Origin: Isurus oxyrinchus
Taxonomy: Eukaryota
NCBI GenBank assembly: GCA_026770705.1
Contig: JANJGN010000189.1
Location: forward strand, 310,001 to 374,000
Direction of reading: 5' to 3'
Length of the DNA stretch: 64,000 bases
Shown piece by piece: positions 34,081 through 64,000 of the stretch. Position 1 is the stretch's first letter, and each line of letters opens with the position of its first letter. The notes under the pieces are model-generated. The model had not been told where the DNA came from and ran no database searches. It worked only from the letters and a program-made list of their open reading frames with translations. Both the position numbers and the translations under genes were made by a program.

Positions 34081-35129
34081 TTTAGAAAACTGTGCCAGAC
34101 ACTTCAAAAACTTCTTAAACACAACCCTGTATCGAGTGCCTTAGAATACTGGGGCCAATATTTACCCCCAACTAACACCCTAAAAACAGATGGTCTGGCT
34201 CATTCTCACATTGCTGTTTGTGGGAGCTTGCTGTGCGCAAATTGACTGTGGTGTTTCCTACATTACAACGGGGATCTGCACTTCAAAGATAGTCCTTCAT
34301 TCCCTGAGAAATGTTTTTGAACAGTGGATGCTGTGGAACAGTAGGAAACATGGCAGACAATTTCTGCACAGCAGGATCCCACAAACAGCAGTGAGATACA
34401 GACCCAGAACATCTGTTTTTTTTTAATGATGTTGGTTTAGGGATAAATATTGGTCCCAGGACACTGGGGATAACTGCCCCACCCGACTCCATACCCACCC
34501 CCTACACTTCACCCAAAAAGTGTCCATGGGGTTTTTGACATCCATCCGAGGTGTCCACTCTGTGCCTGTTCCAGGATCTTGAGGCTCAAGACCCAACACT
34601 GGGTTCACTTTGAGCCTATCCAATCAGGCACAGGGACTGTTCCCACAAACTGCCAGGCCCTGACTTAAGGCTATTGATCCCTCGCGGCATGAGAGGGATG
34701 ATGGGTTGAAGGTCATCTTTCACCCGAATCCTGTCTTAACAACATTGTAAACGCAGTGGAAAAATCCCACTGGCCCCTTGTATCTTAACAACATCGTAAA
34801 CATGACCTAAAGAATCCCCTGGTCACCCCTGAGTGTTTCTAATATTGTAAATACAGTGGATATATTTCCTCCATCTTCTGAGAGGTAAAACTATGACACT
34901 AGAGCACCACCACTGGCAGGAGGGTGTAACTACAATGTGACATGTTTACATGGGAATGTTACATTACAAATGAAGGTACATGATTGTAAATAATGAAAAG
35001 GGCATGTGATAACAGGAAATGGTGCCTTGGAGAATGCAGTTATTCACCAGAGTATGGTATTTCATTTGAAAAACAATATAGAGAAATGTCTGAGCATTTT
35101 AATTGCTTGTTTTTTATATTCATTTATGG

Positions 35130-37220
35130 GATATGGACGGAACTGGCGAGGCCAGAATTATTGCCCATCCCTAATAGCCCTTGAGAATATGGTAATGAGC
35201 TGCCTTCTTGAACTGTTGCAGTCTATGTGGTGTAGGTACACCCACAATGCTGTTAGGGAGGGTGTTCCAGGATTAGGACCCAGTGACTGTGAAGGAACGG
35301 CCGATATATTTCCAAGTCAGGATAGTGAGTGACTTGGAGGGTAACTTCCAGGTGGTGGTGTTACCATGTATCTGCTGCCCTGTAATTCGAGATGGTAGTG
35401 GTCGTGTGTTTGAAGGTGCTGCCTAAGGAGTTTTGGTGAGTTCCTGCAGTGCACCTTGTAGCTGGTACACACTGCTGCTACTGTGTGTCGGTTGTGCAGA
35501 GAGTGAATGTTTGTGGATGGGGAGCCGAACTAGTGGGGCTGCTTTGTCCTGAGTGGTGTTGAGTTTATTGAATCTTGTTGGAGCTGCACTCATCCAGGCA
35601 AGTGGAGAGTCTTCCATCACACTCCTGACCTGTGCCTTGAAGACGGTGGACAGGTTTTGGGGAGTCTGGAGTGAGTTACTCACTGCATGATTCCCAGCCT
35701 CTGACCTGCTCTTGTAGCCACAGTATTTTTATGGCTAGTCCAGTACAATTTCTGGTCAATGGTAACCACCAGGATGTTGATAGTGGGGCATTCAGCAGTG
35801 GTAATGTCATTGAACATCAAGGAGCGATGGTTAGATTCTCTCTTATTGGAGATGGTCATTGCCTGACACTTGTCAGCCCAAGCCTGGATATTGTCCAGGT
35901 CTTGCTGCATTTGGACAAGGACTGCTTCAGTATCTGAGGAGACGTGAATGGTGCTGAACATTGTGCAATCATCAGTGAACATCCACACTTCTGTCCTTAT
36001 GATGGAAGGAAGGTCATTGATGAAGCAGCTGAAGGTGGTTGGGTCTTGGACACTACCCTGAGTAACTCCTGCAGTGATGTCCTGGAACTGAGATGATTGA
36101 CCTCCAACAACCACAACTATCTTCCTTTGTGCTGGGTATGGCTCCAACCAGTGGAGAGTTTTCCCTCTGTTATGATGTGGTAGATGATGTGTGCCGGGGG
36201 ACCAAATCCACAAGGGAAACTTGGTCACACTATCACAACAGTTTTGCGATTTGTATTTATTATGAGATGTGTGCACTGAATTCAGGAGTAATGTGTCAAC
36301 CAAGACATTTAGAGATCTTAAAAATTAAATTTTAATATTTATTTAAGATTTAAAGCGCACACATAAGGATACGGTTACTACTATAACAAATCCTAAACTT
36401 CCTAATTAACCTTGAAGATGGTGGACAGGCATTGGGAAGTCTGGAAGTGAGCAGTAAAACTCCTTTTAGGCAATAAACCAAAATAGATTTTAGATTTAAA
36501 AACAGAACCAGCAAGTTAACACAGAACACACTTGAGAGTGGATTTCCAAATGGCTTTCTCGAACGACAGTCGCTGAACATAACAGACCTATGGACAAATG
36601 CCTGGAGGCTTCTTCAAGGCTGATTCACACACTCTTGTTAGATTTTACATGATCCCCAACATAGCCTTTCATTCTCCTTTGTTGATGTTTCTCTCTCTTT
36701 GATATGTAAATTTCATTGTTCCATATGTCTTTGGAATGATACATTTCCCATAATATAAAAACTTTCATGTTGCCAATGTTGTCAATAACCTTTGGGAAAA
36801 ATAAACACACTCCTTTGCCTTGCATATCGGCCTCGTTGTAAACAGACCAACAGCCCTTTGAAATCCAAACAATCCCTTCACTTACCTAAAAATTAAAATT
36901 CTCTTTCTCACCTCACATGCAAAGAAAGCCTCCATGTTCACTCATTAGCATTTCAAGTACATTTCTACACCTAGCTTCTTTTGATAATCTCAAACTTGCA
37001 GTCTACCTGACTCCAGGTGTAATTAAACCACACAGACAGACCCATCTACACTCACACCCATAAACCTAGTTTACAACAAACCAGGAAAATATTAAGCAAA
37101 TTATTATACTTTCGTACCACCCCTGATTCCCATTGACTCCAGTTTTACTCGGGATCCTAGATGCCACACTCGGTCAAATGCAGCCTTGATGTCAAAGGCA
37201 GTCACTCTCACCTCACCTTG
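35130..37220 (-). mobile_element. LINE RT fragment interrupted by a probable solo LTR (36168-37118)
   Basis: GVTQGSVQDPTTFSCFINDLP..FTDDC RT motifs; LINE sequence resumes at 37119 after a tgttatga..cgtacca insert. Confidence 0.75.
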
Positions 37221-37410
37221 TATTAACAGATGTTAAATTATACATAATTCATAAGCTTCTCACAATCTTTTACAGCATGGAAAAAGGTGCAGCATTCAGA
37301 AAGCTCACTCAGAACCAATAAAAAAAAGTTGAGCAACATCATATTTCTGTTCATTACTATTTGGCCATGTTGGCTGCACACACCCCACAGCCCCGCTCCC
37401 TGTTTCACAC

Positions 37411-37659
37411 TCAGTTTTTCTGGAACCTGATCTGTGCGTATTCCGTGTCCTCGCTCCTGTGCACAGTCCTGTCACCGCCGGGCAGCTTTGAAAAGTTGAT
37501 GTTGGCGTAGAGAAGCTTGGCGGGATTGTCGGGGTTCCCATGTCCAACATCGCCTCCCACTGGACCTTCAGAGAGATCCCGGGGAGCTGGGGTCTCCCCC
37601 TCACTAGTTGTGTCTCTGGTTGTGTTCCGGGGCTCAGTAATCAGCACGTTCTGTTTACC
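37411..37659 (-). CDS. Gene C distal terminal exon with ITIM (LLYANI) and ITSM (TEYAQI)
   Basis: ctctgtag acceptor, phase 0, 249 nt; classic Siglec tail architecture. Confidence 0.9.
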   Translation of the reverse strand, partial: GKQNVLITEPRNTTRDTTSEGETPAPRDLSEGPVGGDVGHGNPDNPAKLLYANINFSKLPGGDRTVHRSEDTEYAQIRFQKN

Positions 37660-40600
37660 CTACAGAGAAATGGAAACAGAAGATATCCTCACATCAATTA
37701 CTGGTACTGATAGGGTTAAATTATTGTGCAGCCTCATTAGTGTCAGTCGTATCTCAGTGGGTTTAACCCTTTTTTTCACTCTCTTTCTCTGTCTCTCTCG
37801 CTTTCTCTCTCTCTTTATAATTTAATCTCTATCACACTCCAACAGTGCAGCACTCCCTCAATACTGACCCTCTGACAGTGCAGCACTCCCTCAGTGCTGA
37901 CCCTCCGACAATACAGCGCTCCCTCAGTACTGACCCTCTGTCAGTGCAGCACTCCCTCAGTACTGACCCTCCAACAGTGCAGCACTCCCTCAGTACTGAC
38001 CCTCCAACAGTGCAGCACTCCCTCGGTAATGGCTCTGGTGAGTGATGGCTTGGAATCTGCACACAGGTGCCTGGTGTGAGGCTCAATAACATGAACCTTG
38101 TAATCAGAGAGAGGATGAGAGAGAGGGAGAGAGGAGGGACAGAGACAGAGTGTTATTAATCTATTAATGTTTGTATTATAAATGCAAACTGTCTTTTTAA
38201 ACAGAGGTTTAGTCTGTGTGTGTGTCTGTGTGTATTTTAATTGGATTAAAGCCAGCCAGTCTGGGTGCTTTGATGTATAGTAGTTTTCAGATGTAAACAA
38301 AGAGGTAAAGTGGTAATTTGCATTTTTAAATAAAACATTAAATGCCTGAGAGTGAAATCTTAAACCAATCAACGTTTATATTACTAATAAAATTGATACG
38401 ATGAAAGGGGATTTATTATTGGAAGAGATGGAGTTCAAAGGTCCTGATGATACATTGCGAATTTACCTTCAAACAGAAGCCATAAGACCATCAGATATAG
38501 GAGGAGAAATTAGACCATTCGGTCCATCGAGTCTGCTCCACCATTCATACATGGCTGATATGTTTCACAAACCCCATTCTCCCACCTTCTCTCCTAACCT
38601 TTGATCCCCTGACCAATCAAGAGCCCATCAATCTCCGTCTTCCTTACACTCAAGAGCTGGGTATAACTTGAGCAGTTTTGTGTGTGCAGAACAGAGGCTT
38701 GTAACATCAAAGCAGCTGTAAGCCTACACCTGTCTGCAAAGGAACCAAAGTGAAAGGAACCTCATTTGGAATTTGTGAGGTGAAAATGCTTTGCCTGGGT
38801 GTCTGCTTAAAGATAATGGGTTGTCTTAGAGGAGATTAGTTTGAGAATTTGTTAAAAATTTATGATGATACTAGTTTGTAGCCATGTGCATATGTTTAAC
38901 TTGTGTAAATTAATATATGTCTCAAGTAGTTTGATATAAAACCATCTCAAGAACTGGTGGTCTTATTCCTGAATTTAGAGCTGCATCTCAAACATTCCAC
39001 TGGGAAATATAGGTTATGACAGTTGTTTAAAGTTTCCCTCTGGGATTTTAAACAACAGCCTTTACCAGTTTCTGTGTCATAATAGAGAGACAGCATGATA
39101 CTGAACCATTGCTGACTCCACAGATACAAATCAGTGGGTAACTGGGCTGGGAATCTGGGACATGTGTTGTCTACACACTGAGATTGAAGCTTTGGAGTGA
39201 GTGTAAACAGCTCCTGTACCTGGTGCTTCACACAGAGTGAACTGGGGGTCAATGCAATGTCTCTGGTCCCTGAAACTCTCTCCTCCATCGCTGTCTTTCT
39301 CCTGCAATAACACAATATGACACTGTGGTTATCATATAGCAGAGAGTCAGTGCAGCACAGACATAGAGCACACTGTAACCTTACACCAATGACTGGACTG
39401 TCTCTTTAAATCACTTCTGCACAAAGCACAGAATCTAGAATCTTGACACCATCCAGGACAAAGCAGCCCGATTGATCTACACCCCATCCCCCACATTAAA
39501 CATTCACTCCCTCCACCATGAACACACAGTGGCAGCAGTGTGTGTACCATCTACAAGATGCACTGCAGCAACTCAGCAAGGCTCCTTCAACAGCACCTTC
39601 CAAACCCACGAACTCTACCATCTAGAAGGACAAGGGCAGCAGACACATGGGAACACCACCACCTGGAAGTTCCCCTCCAAGTCACTCACCATCCTGACTT
39701 GGAAATATATCACCGTTCCTTCATTGTCGCTGGGTCAAAATCCTGGAACTCCCTCTCTAACAGCACTGTGGGTGTACCTACACCACATGGACCGCAGCGG
39801 GTCAAGAAGGCAGCTCACCACCACCTTCTCAAGGGCAATTAGGGATGGGCATTAATGCTGACATCACCAGTGACAGACACATTCGATGAAAGAATTAAAA
39901 ATCTCACAGCTCAATGTATTTATTGTGACCCTGCTGCACACACTCCCTGTCGAAGGAGCCTTTGTGGTTCTATTGTTAATCGAAGCAGATCAGAGTTACT
40001 ACAACCACTTGCATTTATATAGCACCTTCAATGTAGCAAAATGTCCTAAGGCTCATCTGGGGATTGTTAGTGACATCTTCACCTGACTCTGAGGCACATG
40101 AGGAGATATTAGGGACAGGAGACCAACAGCTGAGTCAACAAAGTCAGTTATTAACGGGCATCTTAAAGGAGGAGCTGGAGATAGGGAATGAGAGACAGAC
40201 ACAGAAAGAAAGACAGAGACAGGGAGAGAGAGAGAGAGAGAGAGGGAGAGAGCGAGAGAGAGAGGGAGAGAGAGAGAGAGAGAGAGAAAGACAGTGAATC
40301 TCTATCCCCAATGGCTCAGCATCCAGTCCTCTCTGGAGAAGCATTTCATTCCAAACCACACCAACCGCAGCCCAATTCCATCCCTTCCTCCCTCTTTCCC
40401 CCTCTCCCCCAGTGGGTGTTTCCTGTTCCCAGGAATCTCAATCACTACCCCCACCCCCATACCTCCTCACTCACTCTCCCCATTTCTCATTCAGTTATGC
40501 TCGAACCTGATCTGTGCGTATTCCGTCTCCACTTCCCTGTGGACAGACCCATCACCACTGGACATCCTCAAGACTTGGGGATTGGCCTAGAGAAACTCTT

Positions 40601-43600
40601 CAGGTTTGTCAGGGTTCCCATGTCCAACATCGCCTCCCACTGCATCTTCAGAGAGACCCCAGGGAGCTGGGGTCTCCCCCTCGCCAGTTGCGTCTCTCTT
40701 TGTGTTCTGGGGCTCAGTAATCAGCACGTTCTGTTTACCCTACAGAGAAATCGAAACAGAAGTTATCCTCACATCATTTACTGGCACTGATAGGGTTAAA
40801 TTATTGTGCAGCCTTGTTAATGTCAGTCGTGTCTCAGTTGGTTTAACCCTCTCTCTCATGTCATATGAAAGATACCACCTATGGCAGTGCAACGCTCCCT
40901 CAGGACTGACCCTCCGACAGTGCAGCACTCCCTCAGTACTGACCCTCCGACAGTGCAGCGCTCCCTCATTACTGACCCTCCGACAGTGCAGCGCTCCCTC
41001 AGTACTGACACTCCGACAGTGCAGCACTCCCTCAGTACTGACCCTCTGTCAGTCTTGCACTCCCTCGGTAATGGCTCTGGTGAGTGACAGTTGGATTCTG
41101 CACTCAAGTGTCTGGTGTGAAGCTCATTAACATGCACCTTGTAATCAGAGAGAGGATGAGAGAGAGAGAAAGAGAGAGAGAGAGAAAGAAAGGGAGGTTG
41201 GGATAGAGAGAGAGACTGTCATGATGCGATTAATAAATATCATGTTATTGGAAATTATTTTTATTCACATCGGGGTTTAGTCTGTGGGTGTGTCTCTGTG
41301 TGTTTTAATTGGATTAAAGCCAGCCAGTCTGGGTATTTGATGTATAGTAGTTTTGAGATGTAAACTGAGGCATAAAAATTTGTATTTTTAAACAGAGCAT
41401 TCAATGCCTGAGAGTGAAATCTTAAACCAATCAACATTTATTTTATTGATAAAATTGATACTATGACAGAGGATTTATTGTTTGAAGGGATGGAGTTCAA
41501 AGGTCCTGATGATACAATTAGAATTTACATTCAAAGAGAAGAGCTGGGTATAACTTGAGCAGTTTTGTGTGTGCAGAGCAGAGGCTTGTAACATCAAAGC
41601 AGCTGTAAGCCTACACCTGTCTGCAAAGGAACCAAAGTGAAAGGAACCTCATTTGGAATTTGTGAGGTGAAAATGCTTTGCCTGGGTGTCTGCTTAAATT
41701 CTATGGGTTATCTTAGAGGAGATTAGTTTGGGAATTTGTTAAAAAGTTATGATAATACTAGTTTGTAGCCATGTGCATATGTTTAACTTGTGTTAATTAA
41801 TAAATGGCTCATGTAGTTTGATATAAAACCATCTCGAGAACTGGTGGTCTTATTCCTGAATTTAGAGCTGCATCTCAAACATTCCACTGGGAAATATAGG
41901 TTATGACAGTTGTTTAAAGTTTCCCTCTGGGATTTTAAACAACAGTCTTTACCAGTTGCTGTGTCATAACAGAGAGACAGCATGATACTGAAACATTGCT
42001 GACTCCACAGGTACAAATCAGTGGGTAACTGGGCTGGGAATCTGGGACACGTGTTGTCTACACACTGAGATTGAAGCTTTGGAGTGAGTGTAAACAGCTC
42101 CTGTACCTGGTGCTTCACAGAGAGTGAACTGGGGCTCAATGCAATGTCACTGGTCCCTGAAACTCTCTCCTCCATCGCTGTCTTTCTCCTGCAATAACAC
42201 AATATCACACTGTGGTTATCATATAGCAGAGAGTCAGTGCAGCACAGACACAGAGCCCACTGTTAGCTTACACCAACGACTGGACTGTCTCTTTAAATCA
42301 CCTCTGCACAAAGCACAGAATCAAGACGCTTGACACCATCCAGGACAAAGCAGCTCGATTGATCCATACCACATCCACCACATTAAACATTCACTCCCTC
42401 CACCACGAACACACAGTGGAAGCAGTGTGTGTACCATCTACAAGATGCACTGCAGCAACTCAGCAAGGCTCCTTCAACAGCACCTTCCAAACCCACGACC
42501 TCTACCATCTAGAAGGACAAGGGCAGCAGACACATGGGAACACCACCACCTGGAAGTTCCCCTCCAAGTCACTCACCATCCTGACTTGGAAATATATCAC
42601 CGTTCCTTCACTGTCGCTGGGTCAAAATCCTGGAACTCCCTCTCTAACAACACTGTGGGTGTACCTACACCACATAGACTGTAGTGGGTCAAGAAGGCAG
42701 CTCACCACCTCTTTCTCAAGGGGCAATTGGGAATGGGCAATTAGTATTGTCCACGCCAATGACAGCCACATTCGATGAAAGAATTTAAAATCTCACAGCT
42801 TAGGAGGAAGCCACTCAGCCCATCGTGCCTGTGCTGGCCTTTTGTAAAAACTGTCCAATTAGTCCTAAGCAAATGTTTAGATTAAAATCAAGTTAAATCT
42901 TCAGACTTACTTTCTCACACAGATGAAGATGAAGATTCCAGCCAGGAAAACACTCAACATGATCCCAGCCGTGAACAATCCTACTGTCCATTTACTGGAG
43001 TCTCTACCTGTAAAAACAGCCATTAATTACTGCACTACAGGTTTACAATGATGCTCCGATGTATCTCGAGAAGCGATACACTCACTCAATGTTTAAATAC
43101 TCATTCTCGGGCAATGCTGACATTTATTGTCCATCCCTAGTTTCCCCTTGAGAAGGTGGTGGGGGGTCTTCCTCCTGAACCACTGGTTTGTCCCAAACTG
43201 GAAGACCAGTTCAGAGGGCAGGTAAGAGTTAACCATGTTGGTGTCTGAGACTGGAGTCACATATACACCCAGACCTGTTAAAATGGACAGGTTTCGCTCC
43301 CTTAAGATCATTAGTGACCCATATTATATATGTAATTTCTATATATATGTATCAACTACCCTCCCTAAAATAATCAATTATCACCTCAATTTCACGCTGT
43401 TGTTTGTGGGATCTTGCTGTGCACAAATCAGCTGTTGCGTTTCCAACATGATAACAGTGAGCTCACTTCGAAACTGCTTTACTGGTTATCAAGAGTTTTG
43501 GGAATTCCTAAGTATTTTATCAACGCAAGTCTTATATTTCGATTTAATCCATGTAACATTTATATATAATATTTATCAATGTGATCCCTATAGCATAAAT

Positions 43601-46600
43601 TTATAATATTTATCAATATAATCTATGTAACATTTATATATAATTTTTATCCATTTAATTTCTGTAATATTTATATATAATGTTTCTCGATTTAATCCAT
43701 GTAACATTTATATATAATATTTATCAATGTAACATATGTAACATTTATATATAATATTTATCCATTTAATCTGTGTAACATTTATATATAATTTTTATCA
43801 ACGTAATCTATGTAACATTTATATAAAATGTTTCTCGATGCAATCGATGTAACATTTATATATAATATTTATCAATGTAATCTATGTAACATTTATATAT
43901 AATGTTTCTCGATGTAATCTATGTAATGTTTATATATAATATTTAGTCGTTTGGGAGGAGAACCTGAGTATTGCTGAGAAAGGACATTTTGTCAAAGCTT
44001 TCTGTCTTGCACCCAATGAAGCAGCTTATCTGGGGGAGAGGGTTCCAGATTTCCACTCCCCTTTGTGTGAAGAAGTGTTTCCTGACATCACCCCCTGAAC
44101 GGCCTGGCTCCAATTTGACCAAGTGTTGCCATTGTCACATGAGGTCAGGTGATTCAAAGCTTGGTCAAAGGGTTATGTTGTAAACAGCATCTTAGAGGAG
44201 GTAGAGAGAGAGGTGGAGTGGTTGAGGGAGGGAATTCTCGAGTTTAGGGATCAATCCAGCTGAGTGGAGATCGATCCTGAGCGAGTCTCTCACCTTTGAC
44301 CCACAGATACATCTTGAACATGGCTTCCCCATGTGGGTTTTGAACCGAGCAGGATGCAATCACTCCCCCCTCATCCTGGGGTCTCATCAGGGTGAGGAAA
44401 CCAGTCACCAGATGCCCATCTCTGACCTGCCACGACACAAAACCTCCGTGTGTTTGGTTACCACTGATGTTCGCACTGGGCAGGTGCCAGGTGAGGTCTC
44501 CGGGTGGGTTGGAGGTGGCCACACAGACGCAGGTGACCCCCTCTGATCTCCGAGTGCACTCCGACTGCTGGGAAATCTCCGGCTTATCTGAGGAGGGAAG
44601 GACAACAATGAGACAACGTCATAGCAAAGTTAGAGCGTAAGATAGAATCTTCACACTGAAACACTCATTCCTGCCTTTGTTACCTCTGCACTCAACTATC
44701 CCAACACTCTCCTGCCCGACCTCCCATCTTCCACTCTCCGTAAACATCAGCTCATCCCAAACTCTGCTGTCCCCATGTCCTAACTCACACCGAGTCCCGT
44801 TCACACATCACTCCCTGTTGGTCACTGAGCTACACTGGCTCCCGGTCCGACAATACCACAATTTTAAAATTAACATCGTTTCAAATCCCTCCTTACTCCC
44901 TCCCTATCTCTGTAACCTCCTCCAGAACCTTCAACCCTCCCTATCTCTGTAACCTCATCCAGCCGCTTCAACCCTCTCTATCTCTGTAACCTCCTCCAGC
45001 CCCTACAACCTTCCTTATCTCTGTAAACTCCTCCAGCCTCTACAACCCTCCGAGATCTCGATGCACCTCCAATTCCAGCCTCTTGACCTTCCCCCGATTC
45101 CTATCGCTCCACCATTGGCAGCCGTGCCTTCAGCTGCCTGGATCCTAACCTCTGGAATTCCCTCCCTCATTTCTCACCTCCTTCGGACAAAATCTGACCA
45201 CCATCAAAAGCATCTTCCCTTCACCCCCACCCCGTTGGCATTCCACAGGGATCATTCCCTCCAGGACACCCTGGTCCACTCCTCCATCACCCCTAGCACC
45301 TCAACCCTCTCCGATGACATCTTCCCATGTATTTGCAGAAGGTGCAACACCTGCCCCTTTACTTCCTCCCCCCTCACTGTCCAATGACCCAAACACTCCT
45401 TCCAGGTGAAGTAGCGCTTCATGCAGACTTCCTTCAATATAATCTACTGCATTCATTGCTCCCAGTGTGGTTTCCTCTACATTGGAGACACCAAACACAG
45501 ACTGGGTGATCGCTCTGATGAACACCTTCGGTCTGTCCACAAGCATGACCCAGACCTCCCTGTCGCTTGCCATTTTAACACCCCACCCTGCTCTCTTACC
45601 CACATGTCCGTCCTTGGCCTGCTGCATTGTTCCAGTGAAGCCCAACGCAAACTGGAGGAACAGCACCTCATCTTCCGACCAGGCACTTTACAGCCTTCCG
45701 GACTGAATATTGAGATCAACAATTCCTGGTCATGAACTCTCTCCTCGATCTTCACTGCTTTTTGAACTTTTTTTTATGTATTCATTTTAATTGTTTTATT
45801 TGTTAACTGTTTTCCACTTATTTTTATTATTACTATTTGAAATTCATTTCCATTTTTCTTGATTGTTTTATCCGCAGATTTTAGTCTATTTTCGATCTTT
45901 ATTCCCTCCACCGTCCCCTCCCCCTGCCACACCCCCACGAGGGCCATCTGTCTCTTTCCAGAGTGCTTACCCTGGTCCGCCCATTATCACACTCTGCTTA
46001 ATGTCACCATTAGCACCTCCTTTATCCAATACCACCACTGTTAACAACCCTTTGACCTTTTGTTTATGACATCTTCCACAATCTCTCCATTGCCTCCACC
46101 TATCGCTGGTTTTCTATCCAGCTCCACCTGTCCCATCGCCCCCCCTTAGACAGGATATATTTCACCACATGTCTACTTCCCTTTAGCTCTGAAGAGGAGT
46201 CTTACGGACTCCAAACGCTAACCCTGTCTTTCTCTCCACAGATGCTGCCAGATGCTCAGAATCAGCTGGATGGACAGAAAGACCAATGAGTGGCTTAGAT
46301 CAAGAGGAGAAGTTCAGCAATTAAAAGGGTTGTTCAGGACAGTTAGAGAGAGAAAGGTCGTCAAGTACGGAGATTGGAAACGAAGACCTGACAGCCTTGT
46401 CCTGACAACCATTGAAGGAGAAACTGAGAGCAAAAACAGAAAGGGAGAGGAAAAATTGGGTGTGTGGATAACGTGGACTGAGCGAGGATTGAAGAAAACT
46501 GGATTAAAAACAACACGATCCCAATGGCTCCACGGAGACCACAGAGACAACAAACAAACAAATGTATCTCCACACTCACGTTCCACAGTGATGGTTATGA

Positions 46601-49600
46601 ACCCCTCCACTGCTCCATGTTCATTCTCTGCCACACACTGATAGTCTCCAGTGTCCCTGGATGTAACGTGAGGAATCACCAACCACAGCTCATTGTTGGA
46701 ACTTGTTCTGTTCATTGGGACATTAAGATGTCGCCACGTCAGGTTAGAAGCTGGGAAGCTCTCGACAGAGCAGATTATCACTGCAGAATTCCCCTCAATT
46801 ATATTGATCGATGAAGCGTTAATCATATCAAGAGAAGTAATTGAGAGATTCTGTGGTGCATCTAAAAATATATAAAGATTTTAATGTGAGCAAACACAGT
46901 GCACAGCAAAACTTCCTGTATCTTCTCGCTGTAACTGATGCCTGTGTGCATTTCTAGGCACCCTCTCTCAAGATAAGTTCCTATGTCACATTTACAATGG
47001 GCACTGCCTATGTAAACTGTCACACTGCAGGAGCATTCTCCCACCAGAGACCCTGCCCATCCAGATTTAAAGAAACAGCCTTTCACATCCTCAGAATGTC
47101 CCCAAGGGCTTGACAGGCAATGAATTATATTTGATCGATGGAGCACTGAGGGGTAAATCTACAATTCTCTGTTCAGGAGGTTGCTCATCCAATTCAGGGT
47201 CTTGTTGATCTGGAGTTTACCTTCCTTCAGCACAGAATCGGAGCTGACACCGAGACTCCAGTGCAGCACTGAGAGAGGAGAGGGAACTCATGTGTGTATG
47301 TGTGTGTGTGTGTTTGTGTTTCTGTACAAGTGAGTGTGTTTGTGTGTGTGTATGTGTGTGTGTGTGTGTTTGTGTTTCTGCACAAGTGATTNNNNNNNNN
47401 NNNNNNNNNNNNNNNNNNNNNNNNNNNNNNNNNNNNNNNNNNNNNNNNNNNNNNNNNNNNNNNNNNNNNNNNNNNNNNNNNNNNNNNNNNNNNNNNNNNN
47501 NNNNNNNNNNNNNNNNNNNNNNNNNNNNNNNNNNNNNNNNNNNATGTGCGTGCTTACGTGTGTGTGTGTGTGTGTGCATGTGTGTGTGCGTGTGTGTGTT
47601 GTGTGTGTGCACGTGTGCGTGTGAATGTGCGTGCTTACATGTGTGTGTGTGTCTGTTGGTGTGTGTCTGGTCTGTGTAACCTGTAAACCTAACCCTTCCA
47701 CACTGATGGTCACAAACATCCCCCACTACCAACAAATTTATCTCAGTAAGGAACATGGCACTGCCAACCTCGTCAATACCATCTTCTAAACAGGGGATTG
47801 GGTAGGAATCTGGTTTTATTGCTGCATTAACCTTGCTGTAATCTATGCAGAATCTGGTTGGAAATGAAATACCTGCTCCTTTTTACCTCCCTCCCTACGA
47901 TGGTATCGTTTTAACATATTGATGTGTCACAGCCGATTCTTTATTCTACAATCTGGGGTGTCTATCAAATAATTTACTTGACCAACCCTCCTAATTACCT
48001 TGTAGGGACCACTGAACTGCGCTTTCAGAGGCTCCCCCTGCCAAGGCAATGATACTAACAAGTCATCCCCCTGGTTGAGATGTTCGGGTCACAGCTTGCC
48101 TGTCTGCCCCATTCCTTCATCTCTGTTTGAGAAACTATAAGATGTTCTTGTGCCACTTTGGAGGCTCCCATGAGCCGTTCCTGAAACATGGACATATCAT
48201 CTGAAATAGAGGATTCATCCCTCTGTCCGGAATATCTTTCTTTGATGTATTTCAGACAGCCTCTTATCTCGTGTCCATAAGTTATTCCAAAAAGACTAAA
48301 ACCTACCGATTCAGTTGGTGAATCTTGTGTGGGAAATACAAGAAAATCCAGTCCTTTGTCCCAGTCATGGGGAGTTCATGACAATAGCTTCAATCATTGT
48401 TTTGAGGGTTTGTTGGTCCCTCTCTAAAGATCCCTGTGTCTATGGATGATATGCTGCGGACTTTAACTGTTTTATACCCAAATTACTCATTATGTTCGGA
48501 AAATTTTAAGACATAGAGATGGAACCTTGATCTGACTGGATCTCCAGCGGTAATCCATAATGGGTAAAAAAATTGGGTTAACTTCCCTATTCCTACTTTA
48601 GCTGTAATTGTTCCTAAAGGGATGGTCTCTGGAAATCGATTTGTCATATCCATCATAGTAAGGCCATACTGGAGTCTGGCTTTCATTTTCGATAATGGTC
48701 TAACACAGTCCACTAATGCTCGTATCCAATGATAACGGACAATTAGCTCACTGGAGGAGGGGAATCCACAAATATCCCCATCCTCAATGAAGGGGGAGCC
48801 CAGCACATCAGGGCAAAAGATAAGGCTGAAGCATTTGCTACAACAATTATCCATTTCTGTCTGGCGTAAAAATAAGTCAGGAAATGGTGCTCAACCAGGG
48901 CTTACAAAAGAAATTAGGGATAGTATTAGATCCAGAGAGGAGACATAAAATTGCCAGGGGAAGCAGCAATGCTGAGGATTGGGAGCAGTTTAGAATTCAG
49001 CAAAAGTGGACAAAAAGATTGATCAAGAAGGGGAAAATGGAACATGGGAGTAAACTTGCAGGGAACGTAAAAACCGACTGTAAAAGCTTCTATAAATATG
49101 TGAAGAGAGAAAGATTAGCAGTGACCGATGTAGGTTCCTTGCAGTCAGAAAGGGGGGAAATTCTAATGAGAAACAAAGAAATGGCAGAAGAACTGAACAT
49201 ATATTTTGGTTCTGTCTTCACAAAAGAGGACACAAATAATTTCCCAGGAATGTTAGGGAACCAAGTGTCTAGTGAGAGGGAGGAATTGAAGATAATCAGG
49301 ATTAGTTTTAAAAAATGAATCTGGAGAGATTAATGGGTTAAAGGTTGAACAGTCCCCAGGGCCTGAAAATCTACATCCCAGAGACTAACGGAAGTGACCC
49401 TGGAAATATTGGAAGCACTGGTGGTCATCCTCCAAAATTCTATAGGCTCTGGAGCAGTTCCTATAGATTGGAGAGTGGCAATTGTAACCCCACTATTTAA
49501 AATAGAAGGGAGAGAAAAATCAGAGAATTACAGACCAGTTAGTCTAACATCAGTCATGGGGAAAATGCTAGAGCCTATTATATAAGGTGTGCTAATGGAA

Positions 49601-52600
49601 CGCTTGGAAAGCTTTAATGGGATTCGACAAAATCAGCATGGGTTAATGAAAGGAAAATCATGGTTAACTAATCTATTGGAGATTTTGAAGATGTAACGAG
49701 TAGAATAGATAAGGGATAACCAGTGGATGTGGTGTATTTAGACTTCAAGAAGGCTTTTGATAAGGTCCTACATGAGGCTAGTGCGCAACATTAAAGCCCA
49801 TGGGATTGCGGGTAATTTACTGGCATGGATTGAGAATTGGTCGATAGACAGGAAACAGAGGGTCAGAATAAATTAGTCTTTATCTGAGTGGCAGGCGGTG
49901 ACTAGTGGTATACCACAGGGATCCGTGCTTGGGACCTAACTATTCATGATATATATAAATGACTTGGGTGAGGGAGCCAAGTGCAATATTTCCAGGTTTT
50001 CTGATGACACAACGCTGGGTAAGGGTGTGAGCTGTGAGGAGGATGCAAAGAGGCTTCAAGGCGATTTAGACAAGTTGTGTGTGTGGGCAAACACATGGCA
50101 GATGATGTGGATGAATGTGACATTGTAGGCTTTGGTGTGAAAAACAGAAAGGCAGAGTATTATTTAAATGGTGATATATTGCGAAATGTGGATGTACAAA
50201 GGGATCTGGGTGTCCTTGTGCACTAGCCAATGAAAGTAAACAGGCAGGTGCAGCAAGTAATTCGGAAGGCAAATGGTATGTTGGCCTTCATTGCAAGAGG
50301 ATTTGTGTTCAGGAGTAGGGATGTCTCACTGCAGTTATACAAGGTCTTGGTGAGACTGCACATGGGGTACTACGTGCCGTTTTGGTCTCCCTCCCTAAAA
50401 AAGGATAGACTTGCCGTCGAGAGAGCGCAGAGAAGGTTCTCTAGGCTGATACCAGGGGCGGCAGGACTGTCGTATGAGGAGAATTGGTACGACTGGGTCT
50501 GTATTCACTAGAGTTTAGAAGAATGAGAGGAGACCTGAATAAACGTAAGAAATTCTAACAGAGATAGACAGACTGGATGGAGGGAGGATGCATCCCTTGG
50601 TTGGGGAGTCTAAAACCAAGGGCGACAATCTCAGGATACAGGACAGGCCATTTTGGACTGAGATAGGGAAACATTTCTTCACTCAGAGGGTGGTCAATCT
50701 GTGGAATTCTCCATCACAGAGGCTGTGGAGGCCGGGTCACTGAGTGTATTCAAGAAAGAAACTGATAAATATTTTGATATTAGGGGCATCAAAGGGTACG
50801 GAGAGAAAGCGGGAATAAGGCTTTGAGATAGAGGGTCAGCCTTGATCATATTGAATGGCGGAGAAGGCTTGAAGGGCTGAATGTCCTAATCGTGCTCCTA
50901 GTTTCTATGTACCTAGGTATCTATAGAACTATCTCTCTCCGTGTTCTATTCTCATGTGACCTTGAGTAATTAATGATAAATACTATCTATTTACATTGTT
51001 AATATTAAACTTTTATACTACATCTCCCCCAAAATCTTTGACATCAATGAAGACAATATTTATATTATCCTATATTGTCTTTTAAGTTCAACCTTGGCCC
51101 CCTCTGCCTTATCAGGTAGGCATAAACAATCCCAAGGCTTAATACAGGAAGAGCTCTCCCTGGTCAATATCACTAATAAAAAAGGACCTGTTTTGTCTTC
51201 AACCCAGTGATGTTTGTGGGATCTTGCTCTGCACATTGTATCCTATTACAGCTAATATAGAATCAAGGGTGTCAGTACTTACCTTGTACAGTTAGTACAA
51301 GGGTCCGCTCCGATGAAACAGATGGATATCTCACTCTGCAGCAGAGAGTGTGTCCGTGGTGTTTGAGTGATGGGGTCAGGGTCAGAACAGAAGTATAGGT
51401 CAGAGTGACACCATGCTGAGTTACAGTGTTTGAGACTGATCCAGGTACGTCAGTGGGAGTGTCCCAGGTTAAGACAGGTGCAGCTGTTCCATTGCACGTT
51501 GTGTTGAAGGTGCAGCTTACATCCACACGCTTTCCTGCAATAATTTCAGCAGGGAATATCGTGGGTTTATCTGTGAAATCTAACAGACAGAGAATGGATC
51601 CTTTTAGAGAAATATAATGTGAAGCATCAGTTCAGATAGAAACCACAGTCCCACAAGAGAAAGCACTTTTACAAGGATGATATGAGAACTGAGAGGTTAC
51701 AATGATCAGGAAAGATTTTCTTGCTCTTTGGCAGTAGTGTTTCTGTCTCTCAGCTTAATACACGTTCACTCCGAGACATGTGAATTGAGAATACTGGATG
51801 AGAGAAGAGGCTGAGACCAGAGATTGGAGTTAAAAGCAGAATACTGTGGATGCTGGAAATCTGAAACAAAAACAAAAATTGCTGGAAAGACTCAGCAGGT
51901 CTGACAGTATCAGTGGAGAGGAAGACAGGGTTAACGTTTCGAGTCCGTATGACTCTTCATCAGACCAGAGGTTTGAGTTCACTGGCTTCTCATTTCCTCA
52001 GTGATCTGGGTGATTTATTACATTGTGGTTTGTTGGATCTTGCTGTGCACAAACTGCCTGCTGTGTTTTACATCTGTGACTACAATTCAGGAATAATTTC
52101 ATTGGCTGTGAAGGGATTTGGATCCTCCTGAGGTGGTAAATTGCGCTGCAGAAATGCACATCTTTCTTTTATCGATACGTCAGACTTTTAAACAGGACAG
52201 GAGAGATTGATGGGAGTGGTAACCTGATAATACAGTTAATGCTTTTCATCATTGATATTAAAGTGAGTATTAGACGTTGCTTTAGGACTGAACTGGAAGC
52301 TATCACCAGGTTATTGAGAATCAGACAGTGTGTTATAATAAGCTGTGTTTTGTGTTAATATGTAAATGTCACAGTTTGTGTTATTTCCCATTGAGTGTTG
52401 AATGTGAATTGTTGAGTAATTATAACACAGCACTTACCAGAAACGTGAAGCTGGGTTACAGGATAGTAGTTGTAACTATTACTGCTGTCAAATTCTATTC
52501 TGAAAAAATAAGGTCCTGCATCTTCCCGTCTGATGTTGTTTATAATCAGGGAACAGTCGCCATCTTTCAGGTCTCCAGACAGCCGGGTCCGATGGCGGAA

Positions 52601-55600
52601 CCGTGGTAACTCGTGACTGTGATCCTTGGAGTGAAAGGCAATAGGAGCCCAGGGAATCTGTTTCTCATTATTAAACCAGACTCCACCTCGCGGTTGGTTT
52701 TCCAGACACGATGGATAACTGTAATGACAAGGAATCTGTACACACGAACCTTCCTGCGCTGTCACCTCTCGTGGAGTGTCACCTTTCCACTCTTGTGAGG
52801 GTTCAACTGGGGAGAGAAATCTCAATATTTAACTCTGGATGGTTTGTGGATCCACTAGACTCAACTTTACAGATGAGGCTGAATTGGGGGGATGGTTAAT
52901 ACTGAGGAGAATGGCAACAAATTATTTTGGCAGGATGAATAGAAAAACAGAATATTATTTAAATGGAGACAGGCTGCAGAATGCAGGACAGAGGGATCTG
53001 GGTGTCCTTGTACATGAATCACAGAAAGTCAGCATTCAGGAACACCACGGAATGAGGAAGGCAAGTGGAATGTTGGCCTTTATTGCAAAGGGATGGAGTA
53101 TAAAAGGAGGGAAGTCTTGCAACAGCTGCACAGGGTGAGATTGTATCAGGAGCAGTGTGTACAGTTCTGGTCTCCTTACTTAGGGAGGGATAGACTCTGC
53201 ATTGGAGGCAGTTCAGAGGAGGTTCACTGGGCTGATTCCTGGGATTAAAGGGTTTGTCCTGTGAGGAAATGGTGAGCAGGTTGGGCCTGTATCCATTGGA
53301 GTTTAGAAGAATGAGGGGTGACCTTATTGAAACATATCCGATTCCGAGGGGGCTTGACAGGGTGGATGCTGGGAGGATGTTTGCCCCTCGTGGGGGAATC
53401 TAGAACCAGGGAGCACAGTTTCGGAATGAGGACTCTCCCATTTAAGACTGAGATGAGGAGGAATTTCCTCTCTCAGAGGGGCGCTAGCCTGTGGAATTCT
53501 CTTCCCCAGAGAGCAGTGGAGGCTGGGCCATTGAATAGACTCAAGGCTGAGTGAGGCAGGTTTTTGATCGACAAGGGAGTCAAGGGTTTGGGGGACAGGC
53601 AGGAAAATGGAGTTAAGGCCACAACCAGATCTGCGAGAGTAGGCTCGGGGGGCCGAATGGCCTGCTCCTGTCCCTATTTCTTATGTTCCTACATTCTTAC
53701 CTTCTTGAAATATTAAAGCTGCAGAATAAACATGCAAGTGACTGACCTGCTCGACCCACCTTCCATCTGGGTGTCCCATGGGGAGGACCCTTCCTGAGCC
53801 AGATCCACCAGCCAACATGGTCTGGATCTGAGCACAGGAGACACGGGGGGGTGTGACTAACAGGCTCCTTGTGACAGGCCCCGTCTGTCCAATGGCTGGC
53901 TTTCAGCTGCCAAGGCCAGAGTGGTCCTTGCTAAAACCGGCTCAGGACAGGTCAGGACACCTGTGCAGACCCCCTCCAGCGCTGCAGCCTCTGTACAAAC
54001 CCCTCATGCGCTTGTGGAGAGACACAAACAAGGCTGCACATTACCGAGGAGAATCCCCTCTACGGACTAAGGGGCTGACTCATCACCTTAAACTCAGCAA
54101 ATGAGGAGGCTCTCACTCGGTATCGGGACTTGGCATTCACTCAATAAAAATAATCAAATGACATTTTGGTCAGAAATCTAAGGAGGTTGTACATTCCCTC
54201 AAAAATAAGACTCAAGCTGGGGTCGAGGGTCAAAGGGCAACAACTTATATTTACACAACAACTTGAACATGACAAATCACCCCAAGGTGCTACACAGGAG
54301 CGTCATAAAACAAAGTATGTCACCCAGACACATGTGGAGATATTAGCGACAGCTGGCCAGAAGAGGACGGTGTTATGGAGAATCTTCAAAGAGGGATGAA
54401 ATGGATAGAGAGAGAGAGAGAGAGGGACGGAGAGGGGTTGAGGGAGGGTATTACAGAGCTTGGGCCCCAGGCAGCTGAAGGCACGGCCGCCGATGTTGGA
54501 GTGATGGGACCGGGGGATGGTCAAGAGGCTGGAATTGGAGGAGAGCAGAGACCTCAGAGGGTTGGAGGGGCTGGAGGAGGTTACAGAGATAGGGAGGGTT
54601 GTAGTGATTGGAGGAGTTACAGAGATAGGGAGGGTTGTAGAGGCTGGAAAATTGAAGAGAGATTGGGAGAGTGTAGGGTATGGAGGAGTTTGCAGAGCTA
54701 GAGAGGTTTGTAGTGGCTGGAGGAGGTTGCAGAGATTGGTAGGTTTGTTGGGCAGGATGATTTTACAGATATAGGGAAGCGGTGGAGGCTTGAAGAGGTT
54801 ACAGAGAATGGGATGGTTGTAGGTACTGGAGGAGGATGAGGAGATTACAGGGATAATGAGGAAACAAAGATGAAAATTGTGACATTGAGACTTTGCTTGA
54901 CCAGGAGCCAGTCTCGGTCATCGAGCAGAGCGGGTGATGAGGGAACGGGACTTGGTGTGAGTAAGGACGTGGTCAGCAGTTTTGGATGGCCTCAAGTTTA
55001 TGGAGTGTAGAGCGTGTTGTTGGAACAGTCGAGTCTGGAGGTAATGAAGGCGTGGATGAGGGTTTCAGCAGCAGATGAGCTGAGACAGGGTGATGTCGTG
55101 CGATGTTACGGAGGTGGAAATAGACGGTGTTAGTGAGGGCGCAGATGTGAGGCCGGAAGCTCATCTCAGGATCAAATGGGACAACAAAGCTGTGAACAGA
55201 TTGGCTTCAATCTCAGAGAGCTGCCAGGGAGAGGAATGGAGTTGGTAGCGAGGGAACAGAGTTTGGAGTGGGGAATGAAGACAATGGCTTCAGTCTTTCC
55301 AATATTTAATTGGAGGGAATTTCTGCCCATCCAGTACTGGATGTCGGATAAGCAGCCTGATAATTTAGCAGCAGTGGAGGAGTCGAGAGAGGTGGTGGTG
55401 AGGTAGAGCTGGGGATCCTCAGTGGACAGGTGAAAACTAACAGTGTTCAGATGATGCTGCAAAGCCATTGCAAGTGATTCTCTGGCTACGATGAGATGGA
55501 TAAGAATGGAGCCAGGGGAGAGCAGTCCCACCCAGCTGGACAACAGTGGAGAGGTGTTGGAGGAGGATGGTGTGGTCGAGCATGTCAAAGGCTGCAGACA

Positions 55601-56466: not shown

Positions 56467-56869
56467 CTACGGAGAGAAATATCAATATTTAACTCTGAAT
56501 GTTTTCTCAATCCACTGTACTCAATATCCACCCCCTCCATCACTGGGGCACAGTGGCTGCAGTCTGGATAATCCACAGGTCACACAATGAATGCCCCAAG
56601 GTTTTACCACAGATCGAAGAGAATTCTGGACACAGGAGTGGACAAGTTCATTCTACATTGGCTCATGGCCCACAGGAACCTATTTAGTGAAGTCAGTCTG
56701 CCACCCAACACAGTGTCTACAAGACGCACTGATTGAAGTGAGTTCACTGCTGATTTACAATGTAGGACAATGGATTTGGAGCCTTCAGAATTCCCCCATT
56801 ATCACCATCATGAATCAGTAATTGGCCTAGCTGTCCTAGATCCTCAGTGTCTAAGGCAGTGGTTCCTAT

Positions 56870-59115: not shown

Positions 59116-59129
59116 CATCCAGTCCAAGT

Positions 59130-63200: not shown

Positions 63201-63417
63201 GCCCTTCTCAAAGATCCATTCCTGCAGCAGGAGCCTGAAGAGTTATTGAAAAGGGACTTAATTTATCGGATTGTAGAATGATTCGGAACAGAAGGAAGCC
63301 ATTTGGCCCATCGAGCCTGTGCTGGGCCTTTGAAAGATCTGTCCAGTTAGTCCCACTCTAACCTCTGCTCTCTCCTCCACAGCCCTGCAAAATGTCCCCT
63401 TCAAGTATTTATCCAGT

Positions 63418-63960: not shown

Positions 63961-64000
63961 TGCATTAAAATAATTGCAATCCAACTTTGCCATTCTATCT

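What the first reader, a model, noticed from the sequence alone, without database searches (positions are those of the whole stretch)
37411..42800. Duplicated cytoplasmic-tail cassette: a possible splice switch between an ITIM/ITSM tail and a signalling-dead tail
Seen: after the single TM exon, the two tail exons are tandemly duplicated with all splice sites and phases intact. The distal last exon encodes LLYANI (ITIM) and TEYAQI (ITSM). In the proximal last exon that first Tyr codon is TAG (40587-40589), which removes both motifs. The proximal copy has its own AATAAA at 39919-39924, next to the duplication junction, and as a last exon it should escape NMD. Inference: alternative last-exon choice gives inhibitory versus decoy receptors with the same ectodomain, reminiscent of L-/S-MAG but built by cassette duplication.
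Basis: partly seen in the sequence, partly recalled or inferred. Interest (0 to 1): 0.85.

Follow-up and report, generated by a model that had tools for sequence, protein, structure and literature searches.

The report
Shark Siglec doubled tail, one broken
A shark immune-receptor gene of the Siglec family carries its two signalling-tail exons twice in a row, a layout shared by many related shark genes, and here the first copy has a single stop-codon mutation that looks recent, so it is more likely a fresh lesion than an evolved on/off switch.

Summary
On the minus strand, one TM exon (42911-43007) is followed by two tandem copies of a two-exon tail cassette. Splice sites and phases are the same in both. 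TAG is at 40587-40589 and AATAAA at 39919-39924.

The reading needs revision in four ways.
1. The doubled cassette is old and family-wide. Seven RefSeq models of great white and basking shark Siglecs carry two cassettes. Three great white models have this window's layout, and the scan noted at least eight more cases in this genome.
2. The proximal last exon is not a decayed copy of the distal one. It belongs to a separate lamniform "type 2" lineage (YANP + TEYAQI) whose first motif is not a canonical ITIM even when intact. The distal exon is the ancestral "type 1" (LLYANI + TEYAQI).
3. The TAG is private to this genome. All seven proximal exons in relatives have Tyr there, and the 31 codons after it are still open and nearly identical to great white, so the change is recent, polymorphic or an error.
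4. RefSeq joins the cassettes in series through an in-frame donor inside the proximal last exon. Under that splicing the TAG would trigger NMD rather than make a decoy.

Alternative last-exon use therefore remains untested.

The parts
42911..43007 (-). Transmembrane exon (97 nt), donor AAA|GTAAGT, ends in phase 2
   Evidence: 97% aa identity to great white XP_041037239.1 (P0030) by tblastn.
40476..42800 (-). Proximal copy of the duplicated unit (intron part, A1, intron, B1 coding part)
42107..42188 (-). A1, first cytoplasmic exon of the proximal cassette (82 nt, phase 2 to 0)
   Evidence: Three nt differences from A2, all non-synonymous.
40590..40739 (-). B1 coding part before the stop: 50 codons, no tyrosine
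40587..40589 (-). TAG at the position of the first tail tyrosine. TAC in the distal copy, Tyr in all seven proximal exons of relatives.
40491..40586 (-). B1 remnant after the stop: 31 open codons including TEYAQI (40509-40526), then the original TGA (40491-40493)
   Evidence: One of 27 residues differs from great white.
40501..40509 (-). Candidate internal donor CAG|GTTCGA (exon would end at 40507, phase 2). This is the position RefSeq models of relatives use to join cassette 1 to cassette 2.
   Evidence: Junction ...TEYAQIR|RKTA... in P0001, P0016, P0017, P0018, P0030, P0031, P0034. Sequence.
39912..40475 (-). 564-nt spacer after B1, unrelated to the flank after B2. Holds a CT microsatellite and AATAAA at 39919-39924.
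37396..39911 (-). Distal copy of the duplicated unit, with a 172-nt insertion at 38480-38651
39220..39301 (-). A2, first cytoplasmic exon of the distal cassette
37411..37659 (-). B2, distal last exon (82 codons + TGA) with LLYANI (37498-37515) and TEYAQI (37429-37446). Ancestral type-1 tail.
36338..36343 (-). First AATAAA downstream of the B2 stop (about 1.07 kb)
44247..56488 (-). Ectodomain exons of the same gene: V-set 56003-56488 and 52358-52828; C2/Ig exons 51275-51631, 46317-46880 and 44247-44618 (open frames that contain the exons)
   Evidence: Pfam V-set/Ig_CD22/C2-set_2/Ig_3. PDB best matches are Siglec-5, MAG, Siglec-8, Siglec-7 and CD33. 88-93% aa identity to P0030.

Best explanation
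This is the 3' end of a CD33-related-type Siglec gene of a lamniform shark, closest to great white shark XP_041037239.1.

**The architecture.** The cytoplasmic tail is encoded by two tandem two-exon cassettes, and this layout is old and family-wide. The proximal last exon is a lamniform-specific 'type 2' tail (xLYANPQV...TEYAQI: a YxN site plus an ITSM, no canonical ITIM). The distal last exon is the ancestral 'type 1' tail (LLYANI ITIM plus TEYAQI ITSM). The A exons, the introns and the 5' part of the B exons look homogenised between the cassettes (inferred gene conversion). An 81-nt type-specific patch stays distinct.

**The change in this genome.** The proximal last exon carries one private TAC>TAG change at the first tyrosine codon. 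Everything downstream of it is still intact, so the change is recent and may be only an allele.

**Expected consequence (inferred).** Transcripts that include cassette 1 are the default expected from its position and from the identical acceptors.
- If B1 ends the mRNA, translation stops about 80 residues after the membrane with no tyrosine.
- If B1 is spliced on to A2 through its CAG|GTTCGA donor, as RefSeq models of relatives do, the stop lies 80 nt upstream of an exon junction and the transcript should be NMD-prone.
- Only transcripts that skip cassette 1 would give the ITIM/ITSM receptor.

I read this as a fresh loss-of-signalling lesion on a pre-existing dual-tail design, comparable to the polymorphic pseudogenes of primate SIGLEC clusters. 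I do not read it as a purpose-built inhibitory/decoy switch.

**Shown:** anatomy, conservation in relatives, privacy of the TAG. **Inferred:** which splice paths are used and the fate of the products.
For: - **Anatomy.** establish the exons, phases and duplication.
- **Siglec identity.** V-set exon 52358-52828 aligns to Siglec-5, MAG, Siglec-8, Siglec-7 and CD33, with YFFR on Siglec-5's YFFR. Pfam finds V-set, Ig_CD22 and C2-set domains.
- **Relatives with two cassettes.** An HMMER search with the B2 exon found 13 shark proteins. Seven RefSeq models (P0001, P0016, P0017, P0018, P0030, P0031, P0034; Carcharodon and Cetorhinus) contain two cassettes joined at ...TEYAQIR|RKTA.... P0016, P0030 and P0031 have type 2 then type 1, as in this window.
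- **Orthology.** Window exons are 88-97% identical to P0030, with B1 closest to its proximal cassette and B2 closest to its distal one. In a tree of B exons, window B1 groups with the three great white proximal exons (98/98) inside a type-2 clade (100/99).
- **Which type is ancestral.** Type 1 is the only type in Stegostoma, Hemiscyllium, Chiloscyllium, Rhincodon, Scyliorhinus and Mustelus.
- **Privacy and recency of the TAG.** All seven proximal exons in relatives have Tyr where the window has TAG. After the TAG, 31 codons stay open and 1 of 27 residues differs from great white, against 7-8 of 50 before it. B1 and B2 differ from their great white counterparts by similar amounts (8-9 and 10-11 of about 78).
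- **Type-specific patch.** 30 of 81 nt differ in codons 45-71 against 14 of 165 elsewhere (p = 2e-7).
- **Hint of conversion.** A Val in GGDVGHG is shared by B1 and B2 only in this genome.
- **Internal donor.** The B1 donor matches the consensus as well as the gene's own A-exon donor (6 of 9) and has G at +5, which the distal copy lacks.
- **Same genome.** Unchecked scan notes list at least eight further duplicated tail cassettes.
Against: - No transcript or read evidence was obtained. Which cassette is used, and whether the TAG is real, heterozygous or fixed, is therefore unknown.
- The serial RefSeq models may be ORF-maximising chains rather than RNA-supported isoforms. In the same cluster, P0043 is a read-through fusion of two genes.
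- Open reading frames in the proximal exons of relatives are partly an ascertainment effect, because a broken exon would not be modelled.
- By eye, 5-7 of the B1 differences from great white look derived on the window's side. Some relaxation older than the TAG cannot be excluded.
- dN/dS between B1 and B2 is about 1. This fits relaxed constraint on one copy as well as it fits two diverged functional types.
- Orthology to P0030 rests on protein identity only. Genomic loci of relatives could not be fetched.
Confidence: 0.5

Rival explanations
1. Regulated choice between two terminal exons (B1 with its own poly(A) site versus B2) gives a signalling-dead decoy and an ITIM/ITSM inhibitory receptor with the same ectodomain. 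The TAG is maintained because the decoy is useful.
For: Both cassettes have identical acceptors and intact phases. B1 keeps its own stop, and an AATAAA lies 570 nt downstream at the junction. Both cassettes are conserved in relatives, so both are probably used in some way. A stop in a terminal exon escapes NMD (established rule).
Against: The TAG is absent from all seven proximal exons in relatives, and the sequence behind it shows no decay, so there is no sign of long maintenance. The AATAAA is at chance density. Even when intact, the proximal tail is a different signalling type, so any ancestral switch would have been type 2 versus type 1, not inhibitory versus dead. No RNA evidence exists.
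Confidence: 0.2
2. The proximal cassette of this gene is a silent pseudo-exon pair. Transcripts go from the TM exon to A2 and B2, or from A1 to B2, and the TAG has no consequence for the protein.
For: dN/dS between B1 and B2 is about 1. B1 has a stop, and several B1 differences from great white look derived on the window's side when compared by eye (sequences). Great white P0033 is modelled as TM plus a single cassette whose A exon matches the distal cassette of P0034, so skipping or single-cassette loci exist.
Against: A1 and B1 have the same acceptors as A2 and B2 and lie closer to the TM donor, so skipping them would need an unseen silencer. B1 carries only one lesion, and its post-stop part is nearly unchanged.
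Confidence: 0.15
3. The TAG is a base-call or assembly error, or one allele of a heterozygous site. The gene really encodes FLYANP...TEYAQI in its proximal cassette, like its great white counterpart.
For: It is a single C>G difference from the codon seen in every relative, and there is no other damage in the exon.
Against: Nothing in the window marks this place as low quality: there are no N runs nearby and no homopolymer at the site. The error rate of modern assemblies is low (general knowledge).
Confidence: 0.08

Closest known systems
Mammalian CD33-related Siglecs (CD33, Siglec-5, -7, -8, -9, -10)
   Same: N-terminal V-set domain with the YFFR arginine motif, which aligns to Siglec-5. C2-set stalk domains. 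One TM segment. A tail with a membrane-proximal ITIM (LLYANI against LHYASL in CD33, from my own knowledge) and a distal TEYxxI/V motif (TEYAQI against TEYSEV).
   Different: The tail exons are present twice in tandem. A second tail type (YANP in place of the ITIM) exists only in lamniform sharks. Orthology to the mammalian cluster was not tested, and the RefSeq names 'Siglec-8/10/12/13' are automatic.
RefSeq models of great white and basking shark Siglecs with two tail cassettes (XP_041037239.1, XP_041037234.1, XP_041037072.1, XP_041037157.1, XP_041037065.1, XP_078389619.1, XP_078389744.1)
   Same: Same cassette pair. In the first three, the order is also the same (type 2 proximal, type 1 distal), with shared derived residues (EEFL, QVLRMSSGDGS). 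Exon identity to the window is 88-97%.
   Different: They read through the proximal cassette with Tyr intact and are modelled as one long four-tyrosine tail.
Long/short tail isoform systems: L-/S-MAG, CEACAM1-L/-S, CD33 exon 7a variant (own knowledge; CEACAM1 papers surfaced)
   Same: One ectodomain with alternative cytoplasmic ends. One of them lacks the tyrosine motifs because an exon brings an early stop.
   Different: Those systems use a small cassette exon or a frame shift, not a duplicated two-exon cassette, and their isoforms are shown by RNA and protein data. Here no transcript evidence exists, and the stop is private to one genome.
Polymorphic pseudogenes and tail changes in primate SIGLEC clusters (SIGLEC12, SIGLEC14, SIGLEC16; own knowledge; PMC4042635 and PMC7379906 surfaced)
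   Same: A fast-evolving tandem Siglec cluster in which single lesions and gene conversion change or remove signalling in individual genes or alleles.
   Different: Here the lesion hits only one of two tail modules, so an intact inhibitory tail remains reachable downstream.

Membership tests
Siglec (I-type lectin) receptors | N-terminal V-set Ig domain with the conserved sialic-acid-binding arginine | tested here: met
   Exon 52358-52828 gives Pfam V-set 4e-12 and Ig_CD22 3e-9. Its best PDB matches are Siglec-5, MAG, Siglec-8, Siglec-7 and CD33, with YFFRIE aligned to YFFRVE of Siglec-5. The upstream V exon 56003-56488 reads YYLFSLEF and lacks the Arg.
Siglec (I-type lectin) receptors | C2-set Ig stalk domains followed by one TM segment | tested here: met
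   C2-set_2, Ig_3 and I-set hits on exons 51275-51631, 46317-46880 and 44247-44618. The hydrophobic TM exon is 42911-43007.
Siglec (I-type lectin) receptors | Binding of sialylated glycans | not testable with these tools
   Needs glycan-binding assays.
CD33-related Siglec subgroup (inhibitory type) | Tail with a membrane-proximal ITIM ([ILVS]xYxx[ILV]) and a distal ITIM-like/ITSM (TxYxx[IV]) | tested here: met
   The distal cassette encodes LLYANI and TEYAQI. The proximal cassette would give FLYANP (no ITIM) plus TEYAQI, and it is closed by TAG.
CD33-related Siglec subgroup (inhibitory type) | Orthology or synteny with the mammalian CD33-related cluster | not tested
   Only this 64-kb window was available. 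RefSeq names of relatives are automatic.
Alternative terminal-exon (long/short tail) isoform systems | Two mRNA 3' ends, each with a working poly(A) site, seen in RNA | not testable with these tools
No transcript-derived proteins of this family appeared in the protein searches.
Alternative terminal-exon (long/short tail) isoform systems | A poly(A) signal after the proximal terminal exon that is more than chance | tested here: inconclusive
   There is one AATAAA at 39919-39924. Background is nine per 9 kb on this strand, so about 0.56 is expected in the 564-nt spacer.
Serial double-cassette tail as in RefSeq models of relatives | In-frame donor inside the proximal last exon that can join the A2 acceptor | tested here: met
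   CAG|GTTCGA with the exon ending at 40507 in phase 2, while A2 accepts phase 2. It has 6 of 9 consensus matches, like the A-exon donor, and G at +5.
Serial double-cassette tail as in RefSeq models of relatives | Open reading frame through the proximal cassette | tested here: not met
   TAG at 40587-40589, 80 nt upstream of the candidate donor.
Recent or polymorphic nonsense allele in a Siglec cluster | Stop private to one lineage, with no secondary decay | tested here: met
   Tyr in 7 of 7 proximal exons in relatives. 31 open codons follow the TAG, and 1 of 27 residues differs from great white.
Recent or polymorphic nonsense allele in a Siglec cluster | Variation among individuals | not testable with these tools

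The most novel reading that the evidence does not exclude
Lamniform sharks may have evolved a conserved two-module Siglec tail. The proximal module is YxNP + ITSM (Grb2/SAP-type) and the distal module is ITIM + ITSM (SHP-type). The modules are kept distinct against ongoing gene conversion. Splice or poly(A) choice, or serial inclusion, would then set the signalling type and valency of one ectodomain. In this gene the system would have gone one step further: a nonsense change turns the proximal module into a tyrosine-free decoy end. The same change also creates an in-frame acceptor-like TTTCTCTAG|G that could yield an ITSM-only mini-tail.
Probability: 0.15. Interest if true: 0.65.

Novelty: new variant of a known kind. 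Interest (0 to 1): 0.38.

Why it matters
Paired or switchable signalling in Siglecs has been worked out mainly in mammals, where it comes from separate genes or small alternative exons. Here a whole shark order appears to carry a doubled tail cassette with two maintained tail types, one with a canonical ITIM and one without. Automatic annotation has recorded this layout, but three full-text searches found no paper describing it.

If both modules are used, either in series or as alternatives, this would be a distinct way to tune inhibitory receptor output, and it arose independently of mammals.

It looks like one recent lesion in one gene. It is useful as a natural knock-out of the proximal module if it is real and segregating.

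Tried and rejected

- **Reads.** So there is no junction, 3'-end or genotype evidence. The local alignment and hexamer scan inside my own scripts did read the whole region, and the spacer self-comparison used 39912-40374 only.
- **Genomic loci of relatives.** I therefore could not compute dN/dS of proximal exons across species, or compare their stop, donor and poly(A) flanks.
- **Joined spliced model.** Exons were searched one by one by reference.

**Searches that found nothing relevant**
- **Other tail copies in the window.** tblastn with the A and B peptides found only the two cassettes.
- **Transcript-derived proteins.** Two word-index searches returned only RefSeq models.
- **Literature.** Three full-text searches found no paper on shark Siglec tails or on duplicated tail cassettes.
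- **Leader exon.** It was not found upstream of 56488 within the window, so completeness of the gene's 5' end is open.

**Readings considered and rejected**
- **Simple decay of B1 from B2.** Rejected. The divergent 81-nt patch matches a separate, conserved tail type.
- **Assembly collapse or haplotype artefact as the source of the duplication.** Rejected. Great white gene models show the same type-2-then-type-1 order in one transcript unit at three loci or haplotigs, and the copies differ by 5-20% with indels.
- **AATAAA as evidence for a terminal exon.** Rejected as non-significant.

Full report
**1. What is there**

- A 97-nt transmembrane exon (42911-43007, donor AAA|GTAAGT, phase 2) comes first.
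- Exon A1 follows (42107-42188, 82 nt, phase 2 to 0), then last exon B1 (from 40739, phase 0).
- A second pair follows: A2 (39220-39301) and B2 (37659 down to TGA at 37411-37413).
- The last 12 intron bases before A1 and A2 are identical, as are those before B1 and B2. Both A donors are CAG|GTACAG.
- B2 encodes LLYANI and TEYAQI.
- In B1 the homologous tyrosine codon is TAG (40587-40589). It is followed by 31 further open codons that still include TEYAQI, and then by the original TGA (40491-40493).
- AATAAA is at 39919-39924.

The duplication is certain. 41539-42800 matches 38652-39911 at 95% over 1262 nt, and 40476-41541 matches 37396-38479 at about 80%. Similarity ends a few bases after both stop codons. 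A 564-nt spacer (39912-40475) follows B1 and is unrelated to the flank after B2.

**2. What gene it is**

The window holds several Siglec-like genes on the minus strand. For this gene:
- The V-set exon 52358-52828 hits Pfam V-set and Ig_CD22.
- Among solved structures it is closest to Siglec-5, MAG, Siglec-8, Siglec-7 and CD33, and its YFFR aligns on the arginine motif of Siglec-5.
- The stalk exons are C2/Ig domains.
- tblastn with great white shark XP_041037239.1 (P0030) maps the exons at 88-97% amino-acid identity.

The window therefore comes from a lamniform shark close to Carcharodon. I did not try to name the species.

**3. The cassette pair is old and family-wide**

An exhaustive HMMER search with the B2 exon, given by reference, found 13 shark proteins. 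Word-index searches and cluster listings added more.

Seven RefSeq models contain two cassettes, joined at ...TEYAQIR|RKTA...:
- Carcharodon: P0016, P0017, P0030, P0031, P0034
- Cetorhinus: P0001, P0018

The last exons fall into two types.
- Type 1 (...LLYANINFSKLP...TEYAQIRFQKN) is the only type in carpet sharks (Stegostoma, Hemiscyllium, Chiloscyllium, Rhincodon) and in ground sharks (Scyliorhinus, Mustelus). It is therefore ancestral.
- Type 2 (...LLYANPQVFRVPSGDG.VHREEETEYAQIRFKRN) is seen only in the two lamniform species and in this window.

In all seven double models the proximal exon is type 2. In P0016, P0030 and P0031 the distal exon is type 1, exactly as in this window. Their proximal exons also share the window's derived residues (EEFL, QVLRMSSGDGS).

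In a maximum-likelihood tree of B-exon peptides, window B1 groups with these three proximal exons (98/98) inside the type-2 clade (100/99). B2 sits among the type-1 exons.

The duplication therefore predates the split from great white shark, and the two types predate the split of Lamnidae and Cetorhinidae. It is not an assembly artefact of this window. Unchecked notes of this scan list at least eight further duplicated tail cassettes on other pieces of the same genome, one of them 23 kb before this window.

**4. B1 is not a decayed B2**

B1 and B2 differ at 44 of 246 nt, but very unevenly. Differences number 30 of 81 in codons 45-71 and 14 of 165 elsewhere (Fisher p = 2e-7). Synonymous divergence is 0.67 in the patch and about 0.08 before it. 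The patch is exactly the type-1/type-2 difference.

The rest of the unit is much more alike.
- The A exons and their introns are 94-99% identical per 100 nt.
- Identity drops to 85-92% downstream of a 172-nt insertion in the distal copy (38480-38651).
- One substitution (Val in GGDVGHG) is shared by B1 and B2 of this genome and by no relative.

I infer gene conversion between the cassettes, with tracts stopped by the insertion, while the type-specific patch is kept apart. That inference suggests, but does not prove, that the two types do different things. Type 2 lacks a canonical ITIM because Pro sits at Y+3. It keeps a YxN site and the ITSM.

**5. The TAG**

All seven proximal exons in relatives have Tyr at this codon. 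Behind the TAG there is no further damage, and only 1 of 27 residues differs from great white. Before it, 7-8 of 50 residues differ. B1 and B2 have drifted from their great white counterparts by similar amounts (8-9 and 10-11 of about 78).

So the stop is private to this lineage and young. It may be an allele, and I cannot exclude a base-call error.

**6. How the two cassettes may be used**

RefSeq models in two species instead join the cassettes in series through a donor inside the proximal last exon. In the window this donor is CAG|GTTCGA, with the exon ending at 40507 in phase 2, which fits the phase-2 acceptor of A2.
- It matches the consensus at 6 of 9 positions, no worse than the gene's own A-exon donor.
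- It has G at +5, whereas the distal copy has C.

I cannot tell whether these models are RNA-supported. The same annotation also contains an obvious read-through fusion of two genes (P0043), so caution is due.

The poly(A) hexamer after B1 is what chance gives (about 0.56 expected).

By position and equal acceptors, cassette 1 should be the default choice. With the TAG there are three outcomes:
- a terminal B1 gives a tail of about 80 residues without tyrosine;
- a serially spliced B1 puts the stop 80 nt upstream of a junction, which is NMD-prone by the 50-55 nt rule (established knowledge);
- only skipping cassette 1 gives the ITIM/ITSM receptor.

**7. Verdict**

A dual-tail design is real and probably functional in the family. 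The 'signalling-dead' end, however, is a private and apparently recent nonsense change, not a conserved isoform, and its effect depends on splicing that nobody has yet measured here.

My odds are:
- best reading (lesion on an old dual-cassette design): 0.5
- evolved inhibitory/decoy switch: 0.2
- silent pseudo-exon: 0.15
- sequence error or heterozygous site: 0.08

The closest known things are mammalian CD33-related Siglecs (same domain plan and tail motifs), the RefSeq double-cassette shark models (same architecture, open frame), long/short tail isoform systems such as MAG and CEACAM1 (same logic, different construction), and polymorphic SIGLEC pseudogenes of primates.

For novelty, the doubled tail cassette with two maintained types is a new variant of a known kind. 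It is already predicted by automatic annotation and was repeatedly noted by this scan on other DNA of the same genome, but three full-text searches found it in no paper.

**Limits**
- The joined spliced protein was not searched, because exons were searched singly by reference.
- Read laying gave nothing.

Noticed in passing
window 40586-40597 (minus strand): The TAC>TAG change creates TTTCTCTAG|G, an acceptor-like motif. Splicing from the phase-0 donor of A1 to 40586 would stay in frame, bypass the stop and keep TEYAQI, giving an ITSM-only mini-tail. The pyrimidine tract is short and the true acceptor lies 150 nt upstream, so use is doubtful.
   Followed up: no
window 38480-38651: A 172-nt insertion, present only in the distal copy, sits exactly where identity between the copies drops from about 95% to about 88%. 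This is as expected if gene-conversion tracts stop at the heterology.
   Followed up: partly
window 37777-38111 and 40819-41153; also 15.0-15.9, 22.2-22.6, 25.0-25.8 and 27.6-28.4 kb; 43459-44019: Arrays of a 33-nt tandem repeat lie inside both cassette introns, and the same repeat occurs at many other places in the window. A separate 37-nt-period array lies just upstream of the TM exon.
   Followed up: no
window 56003-56488 and 52358-52828: Two V-set exons lie ahead of one stalk. The upstream one reads YYLFSLEF (no arginine) and the downstream one YFFRIEF (arginine present). This agrees with scan note s1-865448.
   Followed up: partly
window 44620-46550: The Ig exon that corresponds to residues 217-299 of great white XP_041037239.1 has no match between the flanking exons. 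Exon content of the stalk differs between close relatives.
   Followed up: no
window 56489-64000: No leader exon of the MIGKSYFLLSLLQ type was found upstream of the first V exon. The stretch holds retroelement-like open frames, so the gene's 5' end may lie outside the window.
   Followed up: partly
P0043 (Cetorhinus XP_078389645.1): This RefSeq model runs through ...TEYAQIRFQKN into the leader of the next Siglec gene. It is a read-through fusion, and it shows that automatic chaining in this cluster is not always reliable.
   Followed up: no
P0003 (Carcharodon XP_041037176.1): Its type-1 tail reads LLCANI, with Cys in place of the ITIM tyrosine. This is another natural loss of that tyrosine in the family.
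   Followed up: no
window 42317-42790 and 39430-39901; also 35111-35575 (inverted) and 13369-13781: The upstream end of each duplicated unit is a dispersed repeat with about 80% copies elsewhere in the window. Repeat-mediated unequal exchange is a plausible origin of the duplication.
   Followed up: no
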